This document shows positions 12,938 through 20,619 of a stretch of DNA of 64,000 bases, piece after piece (position 1 is the first letter of the stretch; each line of letters begins with the position of its first letter). Source of the stretch: Dendrobates tinctorius. Lineage: Eukaryota. Below the pieces are notes generated by a model that saw only the letters and a program-made list of their open reading frames with translations, made no database searches and was not told the DNA's origin. The position numbers and the translations under genes were made by a program. The stretch lies in contig NW_027361684.1 of assembly GCF_039654945.1 (NCBI RefSeq), positions 52,452,001-52,516,000 of the forward strand, read 5' to 3'.

Positions 12938-13377
12938 GTGAGAACTATTAGATCAGCGGGGCTCTGAATGCTGAGACTCCCAACAGAACGGGGCACTTGT
13001 AGCAGCGGTTGTGCATGCAGTATGTGCTGCTGCTACATTGATTCTCTAAGGCTAGTTTCACACTTGCTTTTTTTTGCAGCGCGTTTTTCCCGCAAAAAAA
13101 CGCATTAAAAAAACGCATACAAATGCATACAAACGCTGCGTTTTTTTCCAGCATTTTAATGCGCATGCAGGAAAAAAACGCAGCGTTTTTGCGCGTTTGT
13201 ATGCGTTTTTTGTGCGTTTGCGTTTTTTTACAGATTTTGGAAAAACCCCACAAAAAAGAAAAAACAACCATTCAACAACACACAAGACCAATGGGACTTC
13301 ATTGTGGGTGTGGTATGTTAATATATATACACCCTGTCTACAGTATTCTTCACATTTGCTTGATTCTTCTCGTGACC

Positions 13378-14765
13378 ATGGATCTGCGCTGGAAGAGTTT
13401 TCACTTCAACTTGGATTTGGACATCGCGATGGCTCAGGCGTATGCAGTTGCTTGCCATGAACAAAGGAAGAGAGAGAGGCAGCGAAGACGGCGGCGTATG
13501 TGGATACATCCGATTGTTGAACTCCGGGAGAGCCGTGGGGCATACCATACCCTCTACAGCGAGCTCCAGTCAAACCCGGAGAAATTTACAGATTATATCC
13601 GGATGTCCCACGAAAGTTTCATGGATTTGCTTGCTCGTGTCCAACAATCCATCCGGAGACAGGACACACAGCTCCGTCGTGCGATTCCTCCTGAGGAACG
13701 GCTACTGGTGACATTACGGTATGTTTTAAAAACAAAGGGGTGTGGTCTGATGTTTTTTTTTGTAAATTTAGTATTCAAAACCTTGGGTAATTAGTTTTCG
13801 TGAATGTACTAATATTTTTTTTATAGTTTTTAAAAATAATATACATAAATATTAATTTTACTTCTTTGTCTGTTCACAGATTCCTGGCGACTGGAGAAAC
13901 CCTATCCTCACTACACTTCCAGTACCGTATTGGAATCTCTACCTTGTCTGGAATTGTTGCTGACACCTGCCGGGCTCTCTGGAATGTTCTTTGCCCAGAA
14001 TTTATGCCCCTGCCCACCGCTGAAAAGTGGATGGAAATTGCTGACAAATTCTGGACAGTATGCAATTTTCCCAACTGTTTGGGAGCTGTTGATGGGAAAC
14101 ACATACGGATCATCAAACCCCAAAGAACGGGATCTGAGTACTATAATTACAAAAAGTACTTTTCAATAGTACTCATTGCAATTGCGGATGCCGGATGTAT
14201 GTTTGTAGCAGTGGACATTGGAGCATTTGGCCGTGGTAATGACTCGCAGGCTTTTAAAAACTCAGACATGGGCCGGAGGTTGTATGGCAACCAATTTAAT
14301 TTCCCTATGCCACGGCCTCTTCCTCACACCGAAGCTCCGCCACTGCCCTTTGTAATGGTTGGCGATGAGGCTTTTCAAATGTGCGGAAACTTACTGAAAC
14401 CCTACTCCAGCCGGGACTTGGACCACACCAAAAAAATTTTTAATTACAGGCTGACCAGGGCCAGAAGAACTGTCGAGTGTGCTTTTGGGATTCTTGTTTC
14501 CAGATGGCGAATTCTGGGCACGGCCATTAATCTTAAACTTGAAACAGTCGATGAGGTGGTGAAGGCCTGTGTGGTTCTACATAACTTTGTGATGGCTAAA
14601 GAGCACCCGACCTTTGAACTGGACGATGATGCTCCTAACCCATTGCCTGAATTCACTCAGCACACTCTCAGGTCATCCGTTGAAGTTGGCCAAATGAGGG
14701 ACAAATTTGCGGCCTACTTTATTTCTGATGTAGGACGGGTGCACTGGCAAGATGAAATGGTGTAA
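13378..14765 (+). CDS. Harbinger transposase (HARBI1/ALP1-like DDE_Tnp_4), 2 exons, 408 aa
   Basis: Exons 13378-13718 and 13880-14765; the GT-AG intron restores LLVTLR-FLATG. Catalytic motifs GAVDGKH, VGDEAF and RARRTVECAFG present; no stops; AATAAA at 14782. Confidence 0.95.
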
Positions 14766-15133
14766 TGTTGTTGTTTATGGTAATAAAAATCCTTATTTGA
14801 TACCATTACTGAGTGCACTATATTTTTTAAACTCCGATTAATTAAAAAACTTCCCATATATAACTGAATTTTATTATGTTCACACACCTGGGCAGGTAAA
14901 TACACATACGAGTTAAAATGCAGCATTGCTAGTCTGCGTTAAATATATTGGAATGAGCAAAGCTGCAGGCCATGAATCAGGAAACCATTTTTTTTCAAGA
15001 TAAAATTGTGCAAATAGTTTAAAACAAAGTATGTGATTTTCTCAAAACACAACACTCAAAACCCAACCCCAATGAAAGTCCATGGGGAATACAAGTCAGC
15101 ATTGAGTGGATGAATGTAATCTGCTCCATTAAA

Positions 15134-15975
15134 AGTTATTACACTAGGCCTTTGAATGACTATACTAGGCCGTGGTATTTCAAATATGAGTATACTAGGC
15201 CTTGGGGCTAGTAGTATAGTAATATGTGAAATACCACGGCCTAGTATAGTCATACCAAGGCCTACTGTAATAACTCGATTTTTAACAACTAGCATCTTGT
15301 TTCACCAAAAACAAACTGGTGAAACTAGAAAGAAACTTATTTTTTAGACAAGTTTCAACAGTTTGTTTTTCATGAAACCAGATTCTATTTTGTAAAACTA
15401 GAGTTATTACACTAGGCCTTGGAATGACTATACTAGGCCGTGGTATTTCAAATATGAGTATACTAGGCCTTGGGGCTAGTAGTATATGTGAAATACCACG
15501 GCCTAGTATAGTCATACCAAGGCCTACTGTAATAACTCGATTTTTAACAACTAGCATCTTGTTTCACCAAAAACAAACTGGTGAAACTAGAAAGAAACTT
15601 ATTTTTTAGACAAGTTTCAACAGTTTGTTTTTCATGAAACCAGATTCTATTTTGTAAAACTAGAGTTATTACACTAGGCCTTGGAATGACTATACTAGGC
15701 CGTGGTATTTCAAATATGAGTATACTAGGCCTTGGGGCTAGTAGTATATGTGAAATACCACGGCCTAGTATAGTCATACCAAGGCCTACTGTAATAACTC
15801 GATTTTTAACAACTAGCATCTTGTTTCACCAAAAACAAACTGGTGAAACTAGAAAGAAACTTATTTTTTAGACAAGTTTCAACAGTTTGTTTTTCATGAA
15901 ACCAGATTCTATTTTGTAAAACTAGAGTTATTACACTAGGCCTTTGAATGACTATACTAGTCCATGTTATTTCAC
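15134..15975. repeat. 262-bp tandem array (about 3.2 copies), each unit made of two long inverted repeats
   Basis: Period 262 (identical ORFs at 15282/15544 and 15424/15686). In one unit, hairpin A spans 15401-15538 and hairpin B 15541-15659. Confidence 0.92.
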
Positions 15976-16121
15976 ATATGACTATACTAGCCCTTGGGTT
16001 GGTTTTTAACATGTATTTACCCATCAGTGTGTGTGAGCGGCGCAAACAACATTAATGAAACTTATTAATGGTGAACCACAAATGTAAATTTATTTTTTAT
16101 CACAAAAAAAAAATTTAAAAA

Positions 16122-19100
16122 TTATTTTTTACGGCGTTTGGGGGCAGATGGTTTCAATTTGGGGGTGTGCAGGGAATATGCAACACTTGCAGTTGAAGAC
16201 GGTGTTTGAGGGGAAGGGGCAACAAAACTTGTGGGGGAAGGTAGTCCAGTTAAGGGAATTAAACTTGGAACACTTGTAGGAGAGGAAATCTGTTCAGTTA
16301 CATTAGTTGTAATGGCATGTCGCCGTAGGCTTGTGTGCCTGGACCGACTTTGGCCCAATGCCCGCCTTGATTGATTTCGCCTTGAAGTAGGGGCAAATAT
16401 GGAATGTAGGTCCCCCGTCTGCTGGTATGGCTGCTGCTGCTGAGGTGGCGGCTGCTGCTGCAGAGGTTGCGGCTGCTGCTGAGGTGGCGGCTGCTGCTGA
16501 GGTGGCGGCTGCTGCTGAGGTGGCAGCTGCTGCTGAGGTGGTTGCTGCTGCTGAGGTGGTTGCTGCTGCTGCTGAGGTGGCGGCTGCTGCTGAGGTGGTT
16601 GCTGCTGCTGCTGAGGTGGCGGCTGCTGCTGAGGTGGCTGCTGCTGCTGAGGTGGCGTCTGCTGAGTTGGCTGCTGCTGCTGAGGTGGCTGATGCTGCTC
16701 TTCTTGGTCAGTGCTCGTCCTTGCAGGAGGACTGGTGGCGGCAGTGATGGCCCAGGTTTGCAGAGTGGTGGTGGCAGGGCTACTACATGTTGTTGTAGCG
16801 GCAGGGCTGTTCCATGTTTGCCTAGTGGTGGCTGAGCTCCACGCATGCATGGGATTGGCGGTGGTGCTCCAGACAGGAGCAGCGCTTGCCATGGTGGTGT
16901 CGGTGAAGTGACCAGCTGCACTCAGACTTGTGGTGGTGTAACGGTGGGTGTCCAGCCTTTGAAGAGAGGTGTCCGTGCAGTGGTATGCAGCACAAGTCGG
17001 TAGTGAGGTGAAGCGAGTCAATGGTGGCACAGGTGGAAAGGACACCACTGACTGCTGACCGTACCGATTATGCTGCATAGCCTGCAAGAAAGCATTGTTG
17101 CAGGCCTGCAGCACATTCAGCTGTTGATCAGGACTAAGGTGTTCCGCCATGCCCTTTTCAATCTTACTAAAAAAATGGTGTGCTGGTCTGTTGAGGTCGG
17201 CCTCCAGACGGTCAAGGCGCTGTTCTACAGAATTGAAGCGGTGTTCAAAGTGGTTAAAACCACGTTCCATCAGTGCAAAACCGCTTTCAACTCTGTCGGA
17301 CAGTGACTTGAGGCTGGAATTAAATGTCTCGCTCAAATGCATAAACTCGGGCAAGACATTCCTGTCCAAGGCCCTCTGCCGCTGGCGGGTAGTGCCCGCA
17401 TAACCAGTGGCAGAGACCTGGGACAGGGGAACACCTGATGGCCCAGCTTCCTGGTCACCAGCTGTGTGTGTGTGGGACCTGCAAGGTGCTTCCTGGCTGT
17501 CGGATGGCTGGGACGGGTCAGAGGACGTCCGACGAAGGACCGCTCCAGGGCCAGGTTGCAGGGTGCTGCTCCAGGTGCTGTGGAAGAAAGGAAAATCATT
17601 ACTACCATGCCTTTACAAGAAGCATCAGCTGTGGATTAGAAAAACACAGATTAATAAAAATAAAAACCCAAAATGTATAATACTTACGATCTTGTGGCAA
17701 GGACCGGTCTTAGGAACTGCAACGCGTGATAGTGACGGTATCTAGTTCTGGTCCTTGACGCAGATCCACTGCGAACCTGGCCCTCAGCACGAACATCACT
17801 GTTGAAGCGGTCCTTGATCGAACGCCAACGTGTTCGGACTTTGTCCACTGTTGATAAAAAAAAACAGTGCCGTCAAGTACAACACTCACTGCTTCACAAT
17901 TTAGCAATACAATACTCAAAGCAGTCACTGTACACCCCGATGACACTGTTGGGTTTCCTGCTAGAATACACCTAGCACGAAACCCAACAGTGCCGTCAAG
18001 GACAACAGTCACTGCGGCACAATGTAGCAATACAATACTCAAAGCAGTCACTGTAGACCACGATGACACTGTTGGGTTTCCTGCTAGAATACGCCTAGCA
18101 CGAAACCCAACAGTGCCGTCAAGGACAACAGTCACTGCGGCACAATGTAGCAATACAATACTCAAAGCAGTCACTGTAGACCACGATGACACTGTTGGGT
18201 TTCCTGCTAGAATACGCCTAGCACGAAACCCAACAGTGCCGTCAAGGACAACAGTCACTGCGGCACAATGTAGCAATACAATACTCAAAGCAGTCACTGT
18301 AGACCACGATGACACTGTTGGGTTTCCTGCTCGAATACGCCTAGCACGAAACCCAACAGTGCCGTCAAGGACAACAGTCACTGCGGCACAATGTAGCAAT
18401 ACAATACTCAAAGCAGTCACTGTAGACCACGATGACACTGTTGGGTTTCCTGCTAGAATACGCCTAGCACGAAACCCAACAGTGCCGTCAAGGACAACAG
18501 TCACTGCGGCACAATGTAGCAATACAATACTCAAAGCAGTCACTGTAGACCACGATGACACTGTTGGGTTTCCTGCTAGAATACGCCTAGCACGAAACCC
18601 AACAGTGCCGTCAAGGACAACAGTCACTGCGGCACAATGTAGCAATACAATACTCAAAGCAGTCACTGTAGACCCCGATGACACTGTTGGGTTTCCTGCT
18701 CGAATACGCCTAGCACGAAACCCAACAGTGCCGTCAAGGACAACAGTCACTGCGGCACAATGTAGCAATACAATACTCAAAGCAGTCACTGTAGACCACG
18801 ATGACACTGTTGGGTTTCCTGCTAGAATACGCCTAGCACGAAACCCAACAGTGCCGTCAAGGACAACAGTCACTGCGGCACAATACAGAGCAGGGAAATA
18901 CTCACTAAACGCCTTTTTGGCGGATGCTGTGGCGCTGTCCCAGCCATCCATCAACGCTGCGGCCACCTCATTCCATAGCCGCCGTGTCACCACATTGTCC
19001 TTGTACAGCCGGTCACGGCTGTCCCACAACGGCGAACGCTCCTGGACCAGGCTGATGAGCTGCTCATTATCCAGGTAGACGTCTTCATCCCGTTGTGGAA

Positions 19101-19449
19101 CCTAGACAAAACACATTCATTAGAATAATCAAATTTAAATTGACTAAAAAGTTACAAAAAAAGAAAAAAAAAAAAGAGTAAAAATAGAAGATAAAAAAAA
19201 AAAAAAAACATTACAAATCATTTGATACTTACATTACGTATCACCACCGGGACTTGGCTTCGCTGCTCCTGCTGTTCGCCCTCACTATTCCCGTCCGCAG
19301 ATGATGATGACGATGTCTGAAAATTGAAAAAAACGTAAGAGATTTGGAGAAGCAGCAGATATACTTACCAGATGCACGAAAATAATCACCTCACGGTCTG
19401 CTTGCGCCAATTCCTGCCGCGATGGGGAATACTCCGATTCTGAAGACAT
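16122..19449 (-). CDS. Harbinger Myb/SANT-like (MADF) DNA-binding protein, 5 coding exons, about 651 aa
   Basis: Exons 19449-19390, 19316-19233, 19101-18906, 17847-17688 and 17577-16122, all GT-AG and phase-consistent. MADF signature LISLVQERSPLWD..Y......LWNEVA....VRTRWRSIKDRF; coiled-coil-like region, Q/P tract, C-terminal PKRRKK. The first donor has an alternative at 19369. Confidence 0.88.
16425..16700 (-). repeat. Coding CAG-rich repeat (QQQQPP tract)
   Basis: Repeated GCTGCTGCTGAGGTGG units on the plus strand encode PPQQQ repeats on the minus strand. Confidence 0.9.
17862..18884. repeat. 123-bp intronic tandem array (8.3 copies), one hairpin per unit
   Basis: CCTAGCACG recurs at 17971, 18094, 18217 ... 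18832. The array fills intron 17848-18905 of the MADF gene. Confidence 0.95.
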
Positions 19450-19612
19450 ACTGCATGTAAAAATAATAAAAATCATTAGTACATACATAATTTAAAAGGA
19501 CAGGCATATAATGTAATATACTCACATTCTTCGCTGATATAATGTGTTCTTGGTTGAATGTCTGCTCTTCAATCTGTCTAGTGTAGTAGTGGCAGAGTTT
19601 TGGCAGGCACCT

Positions 19613-19625
19613 CCTTTATATAGCC
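19613..19625 (-). promoter_or_regulatory. TATA box of the MADF gene
   Basis: GGCTATATAAAGG on the minus strand, about 90 bp upstream of a gtgagt donor at 19525 (non-coding first exon). Confidence 0.55.
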
Positions 19626-20619
19626 TTTTTTTTTTGGACTTTAGAAGATTCTAACTAGGATAAAAAGTGGACACCACCCAAAAAACGCTGCGCTAAAAAA
19701 GCGCATACCTGCGCATGCCAGTGCGCACGTATGCGCATCCATAGGCTATAATGGCCATTTTTAGCGCAAAACGTGCGCATACGTGCGCATGCGATTTTTT
19801 CAAGGGCCAAAAAATGCAACATGCAGCGTCTGGAAAATACCAACGCACACCCCAAAAAAACGCAGCGCATGAAAATCGCATACATGCGCTTACAAGTGCG
19901 CAGGTATGCGCACCCATGTTAAATATAGGGGAAAAATCGCATGCGCACGTATGCGTTTTTTTCCAGCGCTAAAAAACGCAAATGTGAAACCAGCCTAAGC
20001 GACTGCTGAAAATAACAGAGTGCTGTACTTGGCTCCATGGCAATATCATAGAACGTGAACTGAGCAGGGGTGTAACCACCACTTCATTCTAAAGAAGAAA
20101 AAACTGACAAATCGGTAGGTAGAATTTGCCAAAATTCAATGCAAATTATGATAAACACAATTTTTTTTTTGGAGATATTATTTAGAGAACCATAAGTAAA
20201 TAGGCTGACATTCTGCCATATAGAAAAATAAAACCTTCCGGTAATTTCATATTACATACCGCCTCTTCACATTCAAATCATATGGTGACATGGGTAGCGC
20301 AACACCAAAATTGCAGCGACACATTGCAACATTGATATAATATTTCCTTTGATGCCTTACCGACACCTACGGCACAAAGTTACATATTTCCAAATGTGTG
20401 GGACTTTCTATTGCTGTTTGCAAGTAACACCAACCCGCTTCATTGGTTTGAATGCATGTTGCACACGACATGCAACTTGTCTGCAACCTACTTTATTATT
20501 ATTACTTACAACATTTGTGTACCTTGTCTATGACTTGCCATTTTGCAGCTATTTTACAGCTATGATTATGATATTGCTGTACATAACACAGCCAAGTTGA
20601 ACATTTCTTTAGAAAATAC

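What the first reader, a model, noticed from the sequence alone, without database searches (positions are those of the whole stretch)
15134..15975. Array of long hairpins between the convergent 3' ends of the two Harbinger genes
Seen: each 262-bp unit has a 55-bp stem with only 3 mismatches (27-bp perfect core; 15401-15538) followed by a 49-bp imperfect stem (15541-15659). The array lies downstream of both AATAAA signals (14782 on plus, 16089-16094 on minus), so read-through from either gene would fold it. Inference: a transposon-encoded dsRNA module that could yield small RNAs, act as a Microprocessor-type terminator preventing antisense overlap, or decoy dsRNA-binding proteins. I know of no such module in the standard Harbinger description.
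Basis: partly seen in the sequence, partly recalled or inferred. Interest (0 to 1): 0.75.

Follow-up and report, generated by a model that had tools for sequence, protein, structure and literature searches.

The report
Hairpin-forming repeat inside frog Harbinger transposon
A young jumping gene of the dyeing poison frog carries a real, strongly hairpin-forming 262-base repeat between its two genes. The repeat changes in copy number, drifts like unconstrained DNA and is missing from related elements, so it is most likely an ordinary unstable repeat and not a purpose-built RNA device.

Summary
Window 15134-15998 holds 3.3 tandem copies of a 262-bp unit made of two long hairpins (RNA folding energy about -131 kcal/mol on either strand, z about -19). 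It lies between the poly(A) signals of the convergent transposase and Myb/MADF-like genes of a Harbinger element (13050-19995, TAA target-site duplication) in Dendrobates tinctorius.

Seven independent insertions of this young subfamily (98-99% alike) all carry the array at the same place, with 2.3 to 5.3 units. Five more distant lineages (74-88% transposase identity) have no trace of the unit.

Across 20 full units, stem columns vary as often as loop columns (20/208 against 6/54). No change is compensated, and 41 pair cells are broken. The edge units have lost their hairpins. The units have diverged about ten times more than transposase exon 2 and roughly as much as the flanking unique spacer.

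In relatives the same spacer holds other insertions: Tc1-like ends and (TA)n palindromes.

Best reading: a palindromic minisatellite inside a transposon, which is a known kind of feature. The proposed dsRNA, terminator or decoy module gains no comparative support, but it cannot be excluded without RNA data.

The scan had already flagged this array on another piece of this genome (s1-386087), without follow-up.

The parts
13050..19995 (.). Autonomous two-gene Harbinger element. TIRs start GGCTAGTTTCACA / GGCTGGTTTCACA, and TAA target-site duplications lie at 13047-13049 and 19996-19998.
   Evidence: Ends read. The same ends, with TAA/TTA duplications at different flanks, occur in six other copies.
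13866..14765 (+). Transposase exon 2 (DDE_Tnp_4), with its stop codon at 14763-14765.
   Evidence: Pfam PF13359 E=5.4e-27. 100% identical to a D. tinctorius protein, P0001.
14782..14787 (+). AATAAA poly(A) signal of the transposase gene.
   Evidence: Read. An AATAAA sits at the same place in L002, L003, L008 and L009, and ATTAAA/AATAAA in L004.
14878..14970 (.). Left arm, loop and start of the right arm of an older spacer hairpin. This hairpin is intact in relative L002 (11686-11816).
   Evidence: blastn 14855-14969 to L002 11665-11779, and in reverse to 11813-11724. The L002 hairpin folds at -57 kcal/mol, z = -8.2, whereas the window remnant alone has z = +1.0.
15134..15998 (.). The array: unit 1 at 15134-15400 (267 nt, with a 6-nt loop insertion), unit 2 at 15401-15662, unit 3 at 15663-15924, and a diverged partial unit at 15925-15998.
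15401..15538 (.). Hairpin 1 of the reference unit. Each arm holds three direct sub-repeats of the motif TACTAGGCCKTGG.
   Evidence: Fold. The motif occurs 12 times in the window, all inside the array, against 0.12 expected.
15547..15655 (.). Hairpin 2 of the reference unit (imperfect, A+T-rich).
   Evidence: Fold.
16012..16036 (.). End of the right arm of the older spacer hairpin, complementary to 14880-14904. The array therefore lies inside a block of about 1 kb (about 14971-16011) that splits that hairpin.
   Evidence: Inverted repeat I10, and comparison with L002.
16089..16094 (-). AATAAA poly(A) signal of the Myb/MADF-like gene.
   Evidence: Read.
16122..17369 (-). Last large coding exon of the second (Myb/MADF-like) gene, including a coding repeat at 16428-16699.
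   Evidence: ORF and TRF. A MADF match, below Pfam's threshold, lies in the upstream exon 18901-19029 (E=0.0058). The homologous segment is kept in L003, L004 and L008.
17862..18884 (.). A second, unrelated 123-bp hairpin array in an intron of the same gene. It is the subject of another finding. Its unit number also varies among copies (6 to 11).

Best explanation
The array is a palindromic minisatellite carried inside one young Harbinger subfamily of Dendrobates tinctorius. A sequence made of two adjacent palindromes, possibly debris of a MITE or a foldback-type element, came to lie in the spacer between the two convergent genes. That spacer is the one long stretch of the element free of coding or terminal constraint. 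There the sequence was duplicated head to tail. Since then the array has hitch-hiked with every transposition. It expands and contracts by slipped or misaligned DNA synthesis, which hairpin-forming repeats favour, either during replication or during gap repair after excision. Its sequence drifts at about the neutral rate. Read-through RNA would fold into long double-stranded stems, but that is a by-product and not a selected function. Shown here: the structure, carriage in all sampled copies, copy-number change, lineage restriction and lack of structural constraint. Inferred: the mechanism of expansion, the origin of the unit and the absence of function.
For: (1) Seven insertions with different flanks and their own TAA/TTA duplications carry the array at the same place. 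Unit counts are 3.3 (window), 3.3 (L001), 2.3 (L005), 5.3 (L006), 4.3 (L007), 4.3 (L010) and 4.3 (L011). L011 alternates short and long units.
(2) blastn and a profile (nhmmer) of the unit find nothing in five other lineages of the same Harbinger family: L002, L008, L009 and L003 from D. tinctorius, and L004 from Ranitomeya. Nothing is found either in about 290 kb of other fetched DNA.
(3) In 20 full units (14 distinct), 20 of 208 paired columns vary against 6 of 54 unpaired ones (Fisher p = 0.80). There are 0 compensated pairs and 41 broken pair cells. The RNAalifold covariation term is unfavourable, +4.0.
(4) Edge units decay. In the old first unit of L006/L007/L010, hairpin 2 has z = -1.6. 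The last partial unit has z = -0.7.
(5) Between the window and the L006 lineage, the units differ by 1.9-2.4% and the flanking unique spacer by 3.3-3.9%, against 0.1-0.2% for transposase exon 2 and 0.3-0.5% for the Myb-gene segment.
(6) The spacer tolerates other insertions in relatives: Tc1-like ends in L008 and L009, and (TA)n palindromes in L003.
(7) The two other repeats of the element also vary between copies: the intron unit count, and the coding-repeat stretch, which differs in length.
(8) Tandem repeats inside DNA transposons with variable unit numbers are documented (PMC4079207, PMC3879986, review PMC6947457).
Against: All seven sampled mobile copies keep at least two full units, and none has lost the array. 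This is what a required part would also show, although the copies are so young that it may be plain inheritance. Hairpin 1 diverges somewhat less (1.4-1.7%) than the flanking spacer (3.3-3.9%), though the counts are too small to be significant. One unrelated lineage (L003) has two very strong hairpins at the same position (p about 0.002 against background). That could hint at repeated gain of hairpins between the convergent genes. No RNA data were available, so lack of function is inferred and not shown.
Confidence: 0.7

Rival explanations
1. The array is a selected RNA-level module of the transposon. Read-through transcripts from either gene fold into long hairpins that are cleaved or that stall the polymerase. 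This would end transcription before the convergent gene is read antisense, or would yield small RNAs or soak up dsRNA-binding proteins to the element's benefit.
For: The array lies after both poly(A) signals and folds equally well on both strands. It is kept in 7 of 7 mobile copies. L003 has two unrelated long hairpins at the same place. The older L002-type spacer also holds a hairpin with z = -8.2.
Against: Stems show no constraint and no compensatory change. Edge hairpins decay. The unit number is unstable. The unit is absent in the five nearest lineages, and the spacers of L002, L004, L008 and L009 are no more foldable than random background segments (p = 0.23-0.38). Stems of 53-55 bp do not look like Microprocessor substrates. 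No Rfam family reaches its threshold.
Confidence: 0.1
2. The hairpins matter, but to the host. Read-through RNA forms long dsRNA that is diced into siRNAs, feeds piRNA production or is heavily edited by ADAR. The array would then work as a built-in silencing trigger that limits this subfamily, a liability and not an adaptation, in the manner of Mu killer-type hairpin transcripts.
For: Near-perfect stems with a 27-bp perfect core on both strands. From my own knowledge, not tested here: hairpin RNA from inverted transposon sequence triggers silencing in maize (Mu killer) and nematodes (Tc1 read-through).
Against: The subfamily is young, has many copies and has intact genes, so it is clearly not shut down. 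No small-RNA data exist here. The 91-aa frame of the unit found no called product in public assemblies, including transcript-derived ones. That is a very weak test.
Confidence: 0.12
3. The array acts at the DNA level in transposition. The TACTAGGCCKTGG sub-repeats would be extra binding sites for the transposase or the Myb-like protein, or the palindromes would form cruciforms that help assemble the transposition complex.
For: Each hairpin 1 arm contains three direct sub-repeats, like the sub-repeated long TIRs of Foldback and Galileo elements (PMC3688188 for Galileo).
Against: The motif occurs nowhere else in the window, including the ends of the element. Their repeated motif is different, of the AAAAACGC type. 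Relatives transpose without the array.
Confidence: 0.04

Closest known systems
Tandem repeats inside DNA transposons (Tetris foldback element of Drosophila virilis, PMC4079207; DTC84 MITE of the clam Donax trunculus, PMC3879986; review PMC6947457)
   Same: Head-to-tail units inside a TIR-bounded element. The array moves with the element. The unit number differs from copy to copy. Edge units are more diverged than central ones.
   Different: Here the host element is an autonomous two-gene vertebrate Harbinger. The array lies between convergent 3' ends, not in the TIRs or the core of a MITE. Each unit is a pair of long palindromes. No spread into a free-standing satellite was seen, and that could not be searched genome-wide.
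MITE-derived hairpin microRNA genes (Made1 elements giving hsa-mir-548, PMC1784062)
   Same: A near-perfect palindrome of transposon origin that folds into a long hairpin when transcribed through.
   Different: The stems are 53-55 bp and about 43 bp, not pre-miRNA sized. There is no small-RNA evidence. Only sub-threshold Rfam matches were found, to plant long-hairpin miRNA models (best 58 bits against a gathering score of 139). Structure is not conserved.
Foldback/Galileo-type long inverted repeats built of sub-repeats (PMC3688188)
   Same: Palindromic arms composed of short direct sub-repeats.
   Different: The palindromes are internal, not terminal. They are not related to the element's own ends. 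Nothing shows that they are bound or cut by a transposase.
The 123-bp hairpin array in the Myb-gene intron of the same element (earlier notes s1-389123, s1-382810, s1-386048)
   Same: A hairpin-forming unit amplified in tandem in a non-coding part of the same Harbinger, with 6-11 units depending on the copy.
   Different: The sequences are unrelated. For the intron unit, earlier agents report a single conserved hairpin in related families. For the intergenic unit I found no homologue at all in relatives.

Membership tests
Transposon-internal minisatellite | Two or more head-to-tail units | tested here: met
   3.3 units of 262 nt at 97% identity.
Transposon-internal minisatellite | Lies inside an element bounded by TIRs and a target-site duplication | tested here: met
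   Element 13050-19995 with TAA duplications.
Transposon-internal minisatellite | Same array at the same internal position in independent insertions | tested here: met
   7 of 7 copies with different flanks.
Transposon-internal minisatellite | Unit number varies among copies | tested here: met
   2.3, 3.3, 3.3, 4.3, 4.3, 4.3 and 5.3 units. L011 has a two-unit higher-order pattern.
PIF/Harbinger transposon (host element) | DDE_Tnp_4 transposase, 3-bp TWA duplication, short TIRs | tested here: met
   PF13359 E=5.4e-27. TAA/TTA duplications in 6 of 7 copies, with one mismatch in L010.
PIF/Harbinger transposon (host element) | Second gene with a Myb/SANT/MADF-type DNA-binding domain | tested here: inconclusive
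   Only a sub-threshold MADF match on one exon (17.4 bits against a cut-off of 22). Exons were not joined.
microRNA / pri-miRNA cluster | Match to a curated family at its gathering score | tested here: not met
   Best match MIR5512, 58 bits against 139. All matches are sub-threshold long-hairpin plant models.
microRNA / pri-miRNA cluster | Stem of roughly three helical turns with a terminal loop | tested here: not met
   Hairpin 1 has 53 pairs in 56 positions. Hairpin 2 has about 43 pairs.
microRNA / pri-miRNA cluster | Discrete small-RNA reads from the arms | not testable with these tools
Conserved structured RNA element of the Harbinger family | Homologous hairpin present in related subfamilies | tested here: not met
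   No blastn or nhmmer hit in L002, L003, L004, L008 or L009.
Conserved structured RNA element of the Harbinger family | Pairs kept by compensatory change, and stems more conserved than loops | tested here: not met
   0 compensated and 41 broken cells. 9.6% of paired columns vary against 11.1% of unpaired ones, p = 0.80. Covariation term +4.0.
Independent nested MITE | Own TIRs with a flanking target-site duplication | tested here: inconclusive
   The units are palindromes, but no duplication flanks a unit, the array or the 1-kb block. Only a weak 15-nt inverted pair was seen by eye, at about 15066-15081 and 15993-16008.
Independent nested MITE | Dispersed solo copies elsewhere in the genome | not testable with these tools
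   None in the window or in about 226 kb of fetched loci. The frog genome itself cannot be searched by DNA here.

The most novel reading that the evidence does not exclude
Harbinger lineages of poison frogs repeatedly and independently acquire long hairpins exactly between the convergent 3' ends of their two genes: the 262-bp double-hairpin array here, two (TA)n-looped 72-73-nt-arm hairpins in L003, and a 58-nt-arm hairpin in L002. They would do so because dsRNA structures there are useful to the element, for example as a two-way stop for read-through transcription or as a source of small RNAs. That would make this array a transposon-borne, expandable RNA device.
Probability: 0.1. Interest if true: 0.7.

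Novelty: new member of a known kind. Interest (0 to 1): 0.27.

Why it matters
As it stands, this is a clean, well-bounded example of how a mobile element carries and reshapes a hairpin-forming minisatellite. Seven dated insertions with 2.3-5.3 units give a natural series for measuring how fast palindromic repeats expand and contract, and for seeing how such arrays are seeded across a genome. It also warns against reading long hairpins in this very palindrome-rich genome as RNA genes. If the minority reading were right, it would be the first described dsRNA or terminator module of a vertebrate DNA transposon with convergent genes.

Tried and rejected
1. Searching for the unit outside the element.
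- Self-blast of the window found only the array.
- blastn and nhmmer over all fetched loci found only the seven family copies.
- An exact-pattern scan of metagenome contigs found 0 hits.
- The scan's own index, searched by sequence, found 0 hits.
- A word search with the spurious 91-aa reading frame of the unit, meant to catch called ORFs on other contigs, found 0 hits.
- None of these can exclude solo copies in the frog genome.

2. Testing whether related Harbingers keep hairpins at this position. A first look seemed to say yes: every relative has some inverted repeat. A length-matched background control removed most of that signal. L002, L004, L008 and L009 give p = 0.23-0.38, and only L003 stands out at p = 0.002.

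3. Looking for a clean nested-transposon boundary around the array or around the 1-kb block 14971-16011. No convincing TIR plus duplication was found.

4. Asking whether the array motif is related to the ends of the element. It is not.

6. One Pfam call failed on a frame with stop codons and was redone.

7. The two transposase exons were searched apart, and the spliced protein was not assembled. Only exon 2 was used, by reference, for the homology search.

8. No contig that looked human was met.

9. P0002 (99% copy) could not be fetched because its gene model spans more than 100 kb.

Full report
**What is there**

Window 15134-15998 is a tandem array with a period of 262 nt, 3.3 copies and 97% matches. 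Its units are in register at 15222/15484/15746.

Each unit is two adjacent palindromes. Taken as RNA, unit 15401-15662 folds into two hairpins:
- Hairpin 1 (15401-15538) has 53 pairs in 56 stem positions, with a 27-bp perfect core.
- Hairpin 2 (about 15547-15655) has an imperfect stem of about 43 pairs.

The minimum free energy is -130.7 kcal/mol on the plus strand and -133.2 on the minus strand. Both have z = -19.4, and no shuffle out of 200 folds as well. As single-stranded DNA the value is -84.5 kcal/mol, z = -20.3.

Each arm of hairpin 1 contains three direct sub-repeats of TACTAGGCCKTGG. There are 12 matches in the window, all inside the array, against 0.12 expected.

So the description is correct. 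The array runs 23 nt further than the coordinates given.

**Context**

The array sits in a 6,946-bp Harbinger element, 13050-19995. Its TIRs start GGCTAGTTTCACA, and it is flanked by TAA duplications.
- Transposase exon 2 (13866-14765, +) matches DDE_Tnp_4 at E = 5.4e-27. It is 100% identical to a Dendrobates tinctorius protein, which identifies the genome.
- The second gene runs on the minus strand. Its last large exon is 16122-17369. An upstream exon gives only a sub-threshold MADF match.
- I searched the exons apart, by reference, and did not join them.

**Is it part of the mobile element?**

Yes. Using the transposase hits I fetched six further copies of the same young subfamily from the D. 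tinctorius assembly: L001, L005, L006, L007, L010 and L011. They are 98-99% identical to the window copy. Each lies in different flanking DNA with its own TAA or TTA duplication.

All of them carry the array at the same position, with these unit counts:

| Copy | Units | Notes |
|---|---|---|
| Window | 3.3 | 262-nt units |
| L001 | 3.3 | 262-nt units |
| L005 | 2.3 | 268-nt units |
| L006 | 5.3 | one old degenerate unit, four 268-nt units and the partial one |
| L007 | 4.3 | old degenerate unit first |
| L010 | 4.3 | old degenerate unit first |
| L011 | 4.3 | short (238-240 nt) and long (265 nt) units alternate, a higher-order repeat |

The array therefore travels with the element and changes length on the time scale of transposition. 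The 123-bp intron array varies in unit number in the same way (6 to 11 units), and the stretch that holds the coding repeat at 16428-16699 also differs in length between copies.

**Is it kept in relatives?**

No. Five more distant lineages of the same Harbinger family were compared. They have 74-88% transposase identity and the same two-gene layout where complete:
- L002, L008, L009 and L003 from D. tinctorius
- L004 from Ranitomeya imitator

None gives any blastn or profile (nhmmer) match to the unit.

Their spacers are 0.4 to 2.7 kb long and contain other things:
- L003 has two palindromes with (TA)n loops, with arms of 72-73 nt.
- L002 has a hairpin with 58-nt arms (z = -8.2) and another inverted repeat with 150-nt arms.
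- L008 and L009 have what look like Tc1-type ends inserted next to or into that same 58-nt-arm hairpin.

In the window subfamily, the left arm and loop of that older hairpin survive at 14878-14970. The tip of its right arm is at 16012-16036. So the array lies within a block of about 1 kb that splits it.

The spacer thus behaves as the place in the element where foreign or novel DNA can settle without harm.

**Do hairpins recur at this position more than chance?**

I folded every 200-nt window (step 50) of the window and of nine fetched loci. I regressed folding energy on G+C. For each spacer I then asked how often a background segment of the same length contains a window at least as foldable.

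| Spacer | Fraction of background segments at least as foldable |
|---|---|
| Array-bearing spacer (window) | 0.069 |
| L003 | 0.002 |
| L002 | 0.26 |
| L004 | 0.23 |
| L008 | 0.375 |
| L009 | 0.31 |

Strong palindromes are simply common in this genome. Apart from L003 there is no sign that hairpins are favoured between the two genes.

**Is the structure under selection?**

In 20 full-length units (14 distinct sequences) from the seven copies, 20 of 208 paired columns vary against 6 of 54 unpaired ones (Fisher p = 0.80). No pair is rescued by a change on both sides, and 41 pair cells are broken. RNAalifold gives an unfavourable covariation term of +4.0 kcal/mol.

Units at the edges of the array have decayed:
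- The old first unit of L006/L007/L010 keeps hairpin 1 (z = -14.8) but has lost hairpin 2 (z = -1.6).
- The last partial unit does not fold (z = -0.7).

The older unit type has a more perfect apex in hairpin 1 than the current majority type. This fits a DNA palindrome that is decaying, not an RNA stem that is being maintained.

Divergence between the window lineage and the L006 lineage:

| Segment | Divergence |
|---|---|
| Array units | 1.9-2.4% |
| Flanking unique spacer | 3.3-3.9% |
| Transposase exon 2 | 0.1-0.2% |
| Myb-gene segment | 0.3-0.5% |

The array therefore evolves roughly like unconstrained DNA. The counts are too small to say whether hairpin 1 (1.4-1.7%) is really slower than the spacer.

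**Comparison with known things**

Rfam gives only sub-threshold matches to plant long-hairpin microRNA models. The best is 58 bits against a gathering score of 139. Any long palindrome would produce matches of this kind.

The stems are far longer than pri-miRNA stems. If transcribed they would behave as long dsRNA and not as Microprocessor substrates. This is an inference from general knowledge.

Tandem repeats inside DNA transposons, with unit numbers that differ between copies, are well documented: Tetris (PMC4079207), DTC84 (PMC3879986) and the review PMC6947457. Palindromic MITEs that become hairpin RNA genes are known from Made1/mir-548 (PMC1784062).

The D. tinctorius genome paper does not mention Harbinger, hairpins or small RNAs. 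The Xenopus small-RNA paper on intronic transposon remnants has nothing specific to this case.

**Verdict**

The feature is real, belongs to the transposon and would fold on either strand. Every comparative test that could have shown a selected RNA device came out as expected for a neutral, unstable, lineage-specific palindromic minisatellite.

I put that reading at about 0.7. I give about 0.1 to a selected RNA module, about 0.12 to a by-product that the host's RNA-silencing or editing systems act on, and about 0.04 to a DNA-level role in transposition.

What remains open is whether read-through RNA exists and is processed. Only RNA data can tell.

The same array was flagged earlier on another piece of this genome (s1-386087) and was not followed up.

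Noticed in passing
L002:11686-11816; window 14878-14970 plus 16012-16036: An older spacer hairpin with 58-nt arms (z = -8.2 in L002) is bounded by TA and by the near-palindromic motif CACCTGSSCAGGTG. It may itself be a small TA-flanked MITE. In the window subfamily it is split by the 1-kb block that holds the array.
   Followed up: partly
L008:~9246 onward; L009:~8829 onward: Sequences that look like Tc1-type terminal repeats (starting TACAGT...) are inserted next to or into that same spacer hairpin in two different relatives. The spacer seems to be a repeated landing place for nested elements.
   Followed up: no
L003:24475-24818: The spacer of a related Harbinger is almost entirely two long palindromes with (TA)n loops, arranged X-(TA)n-X'Y-(TA)n-Y'X. 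It is the most foldable 200-nt stretch in all the DNA examined (residual -111 kcal/mol). It looks like fold-back duplication around an AT microsatellite.
   Followed up: partly
L011:8674-9753: The array in this copy alternates short (238-240 nt) and long (265 nt) units, a two-unit higher-order repeat. The short type lacks the loop of hairpin 2 and the last 9 nt of hairpin 1.
   Followed up: partly
L011:12738-16716: An insertion of about 4 kb interrupts the 123-bp intron array of this copy.
   Followed up: no
L010:28237-29063: A short non-autonomous derivative of about 830 bp carries the left end (89% identity) and right end (72%) of this Harbinger family and nothing of the interior.
   Followed up: no
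window 16428-16699 (-): A coding repeat with an 18/39-nt period (Q/P-rich run) lies in the last exon of the Myb-like gene. The stretch that holds it differs in length between copies.
   Followed up: no
window 17862-18884 and sister copies: The 123-bp intron hairpin array has 8 units here and 6, 7, 10, 6, 11 and about 9.6 units in L001, L005, L006, L007, L010 and L011.
   Followed up: partly
several NCBI gene models (P0002, P0004, P0013, P0017, P0035): Transposase exons of this family are fused in annotation to host genes (GABA receptor beta-2, sirtuin-3, SPF27, ILRUN, phosphomannomutase). These are probably annotation chimeras from intronic insertions.
   Followed up: no
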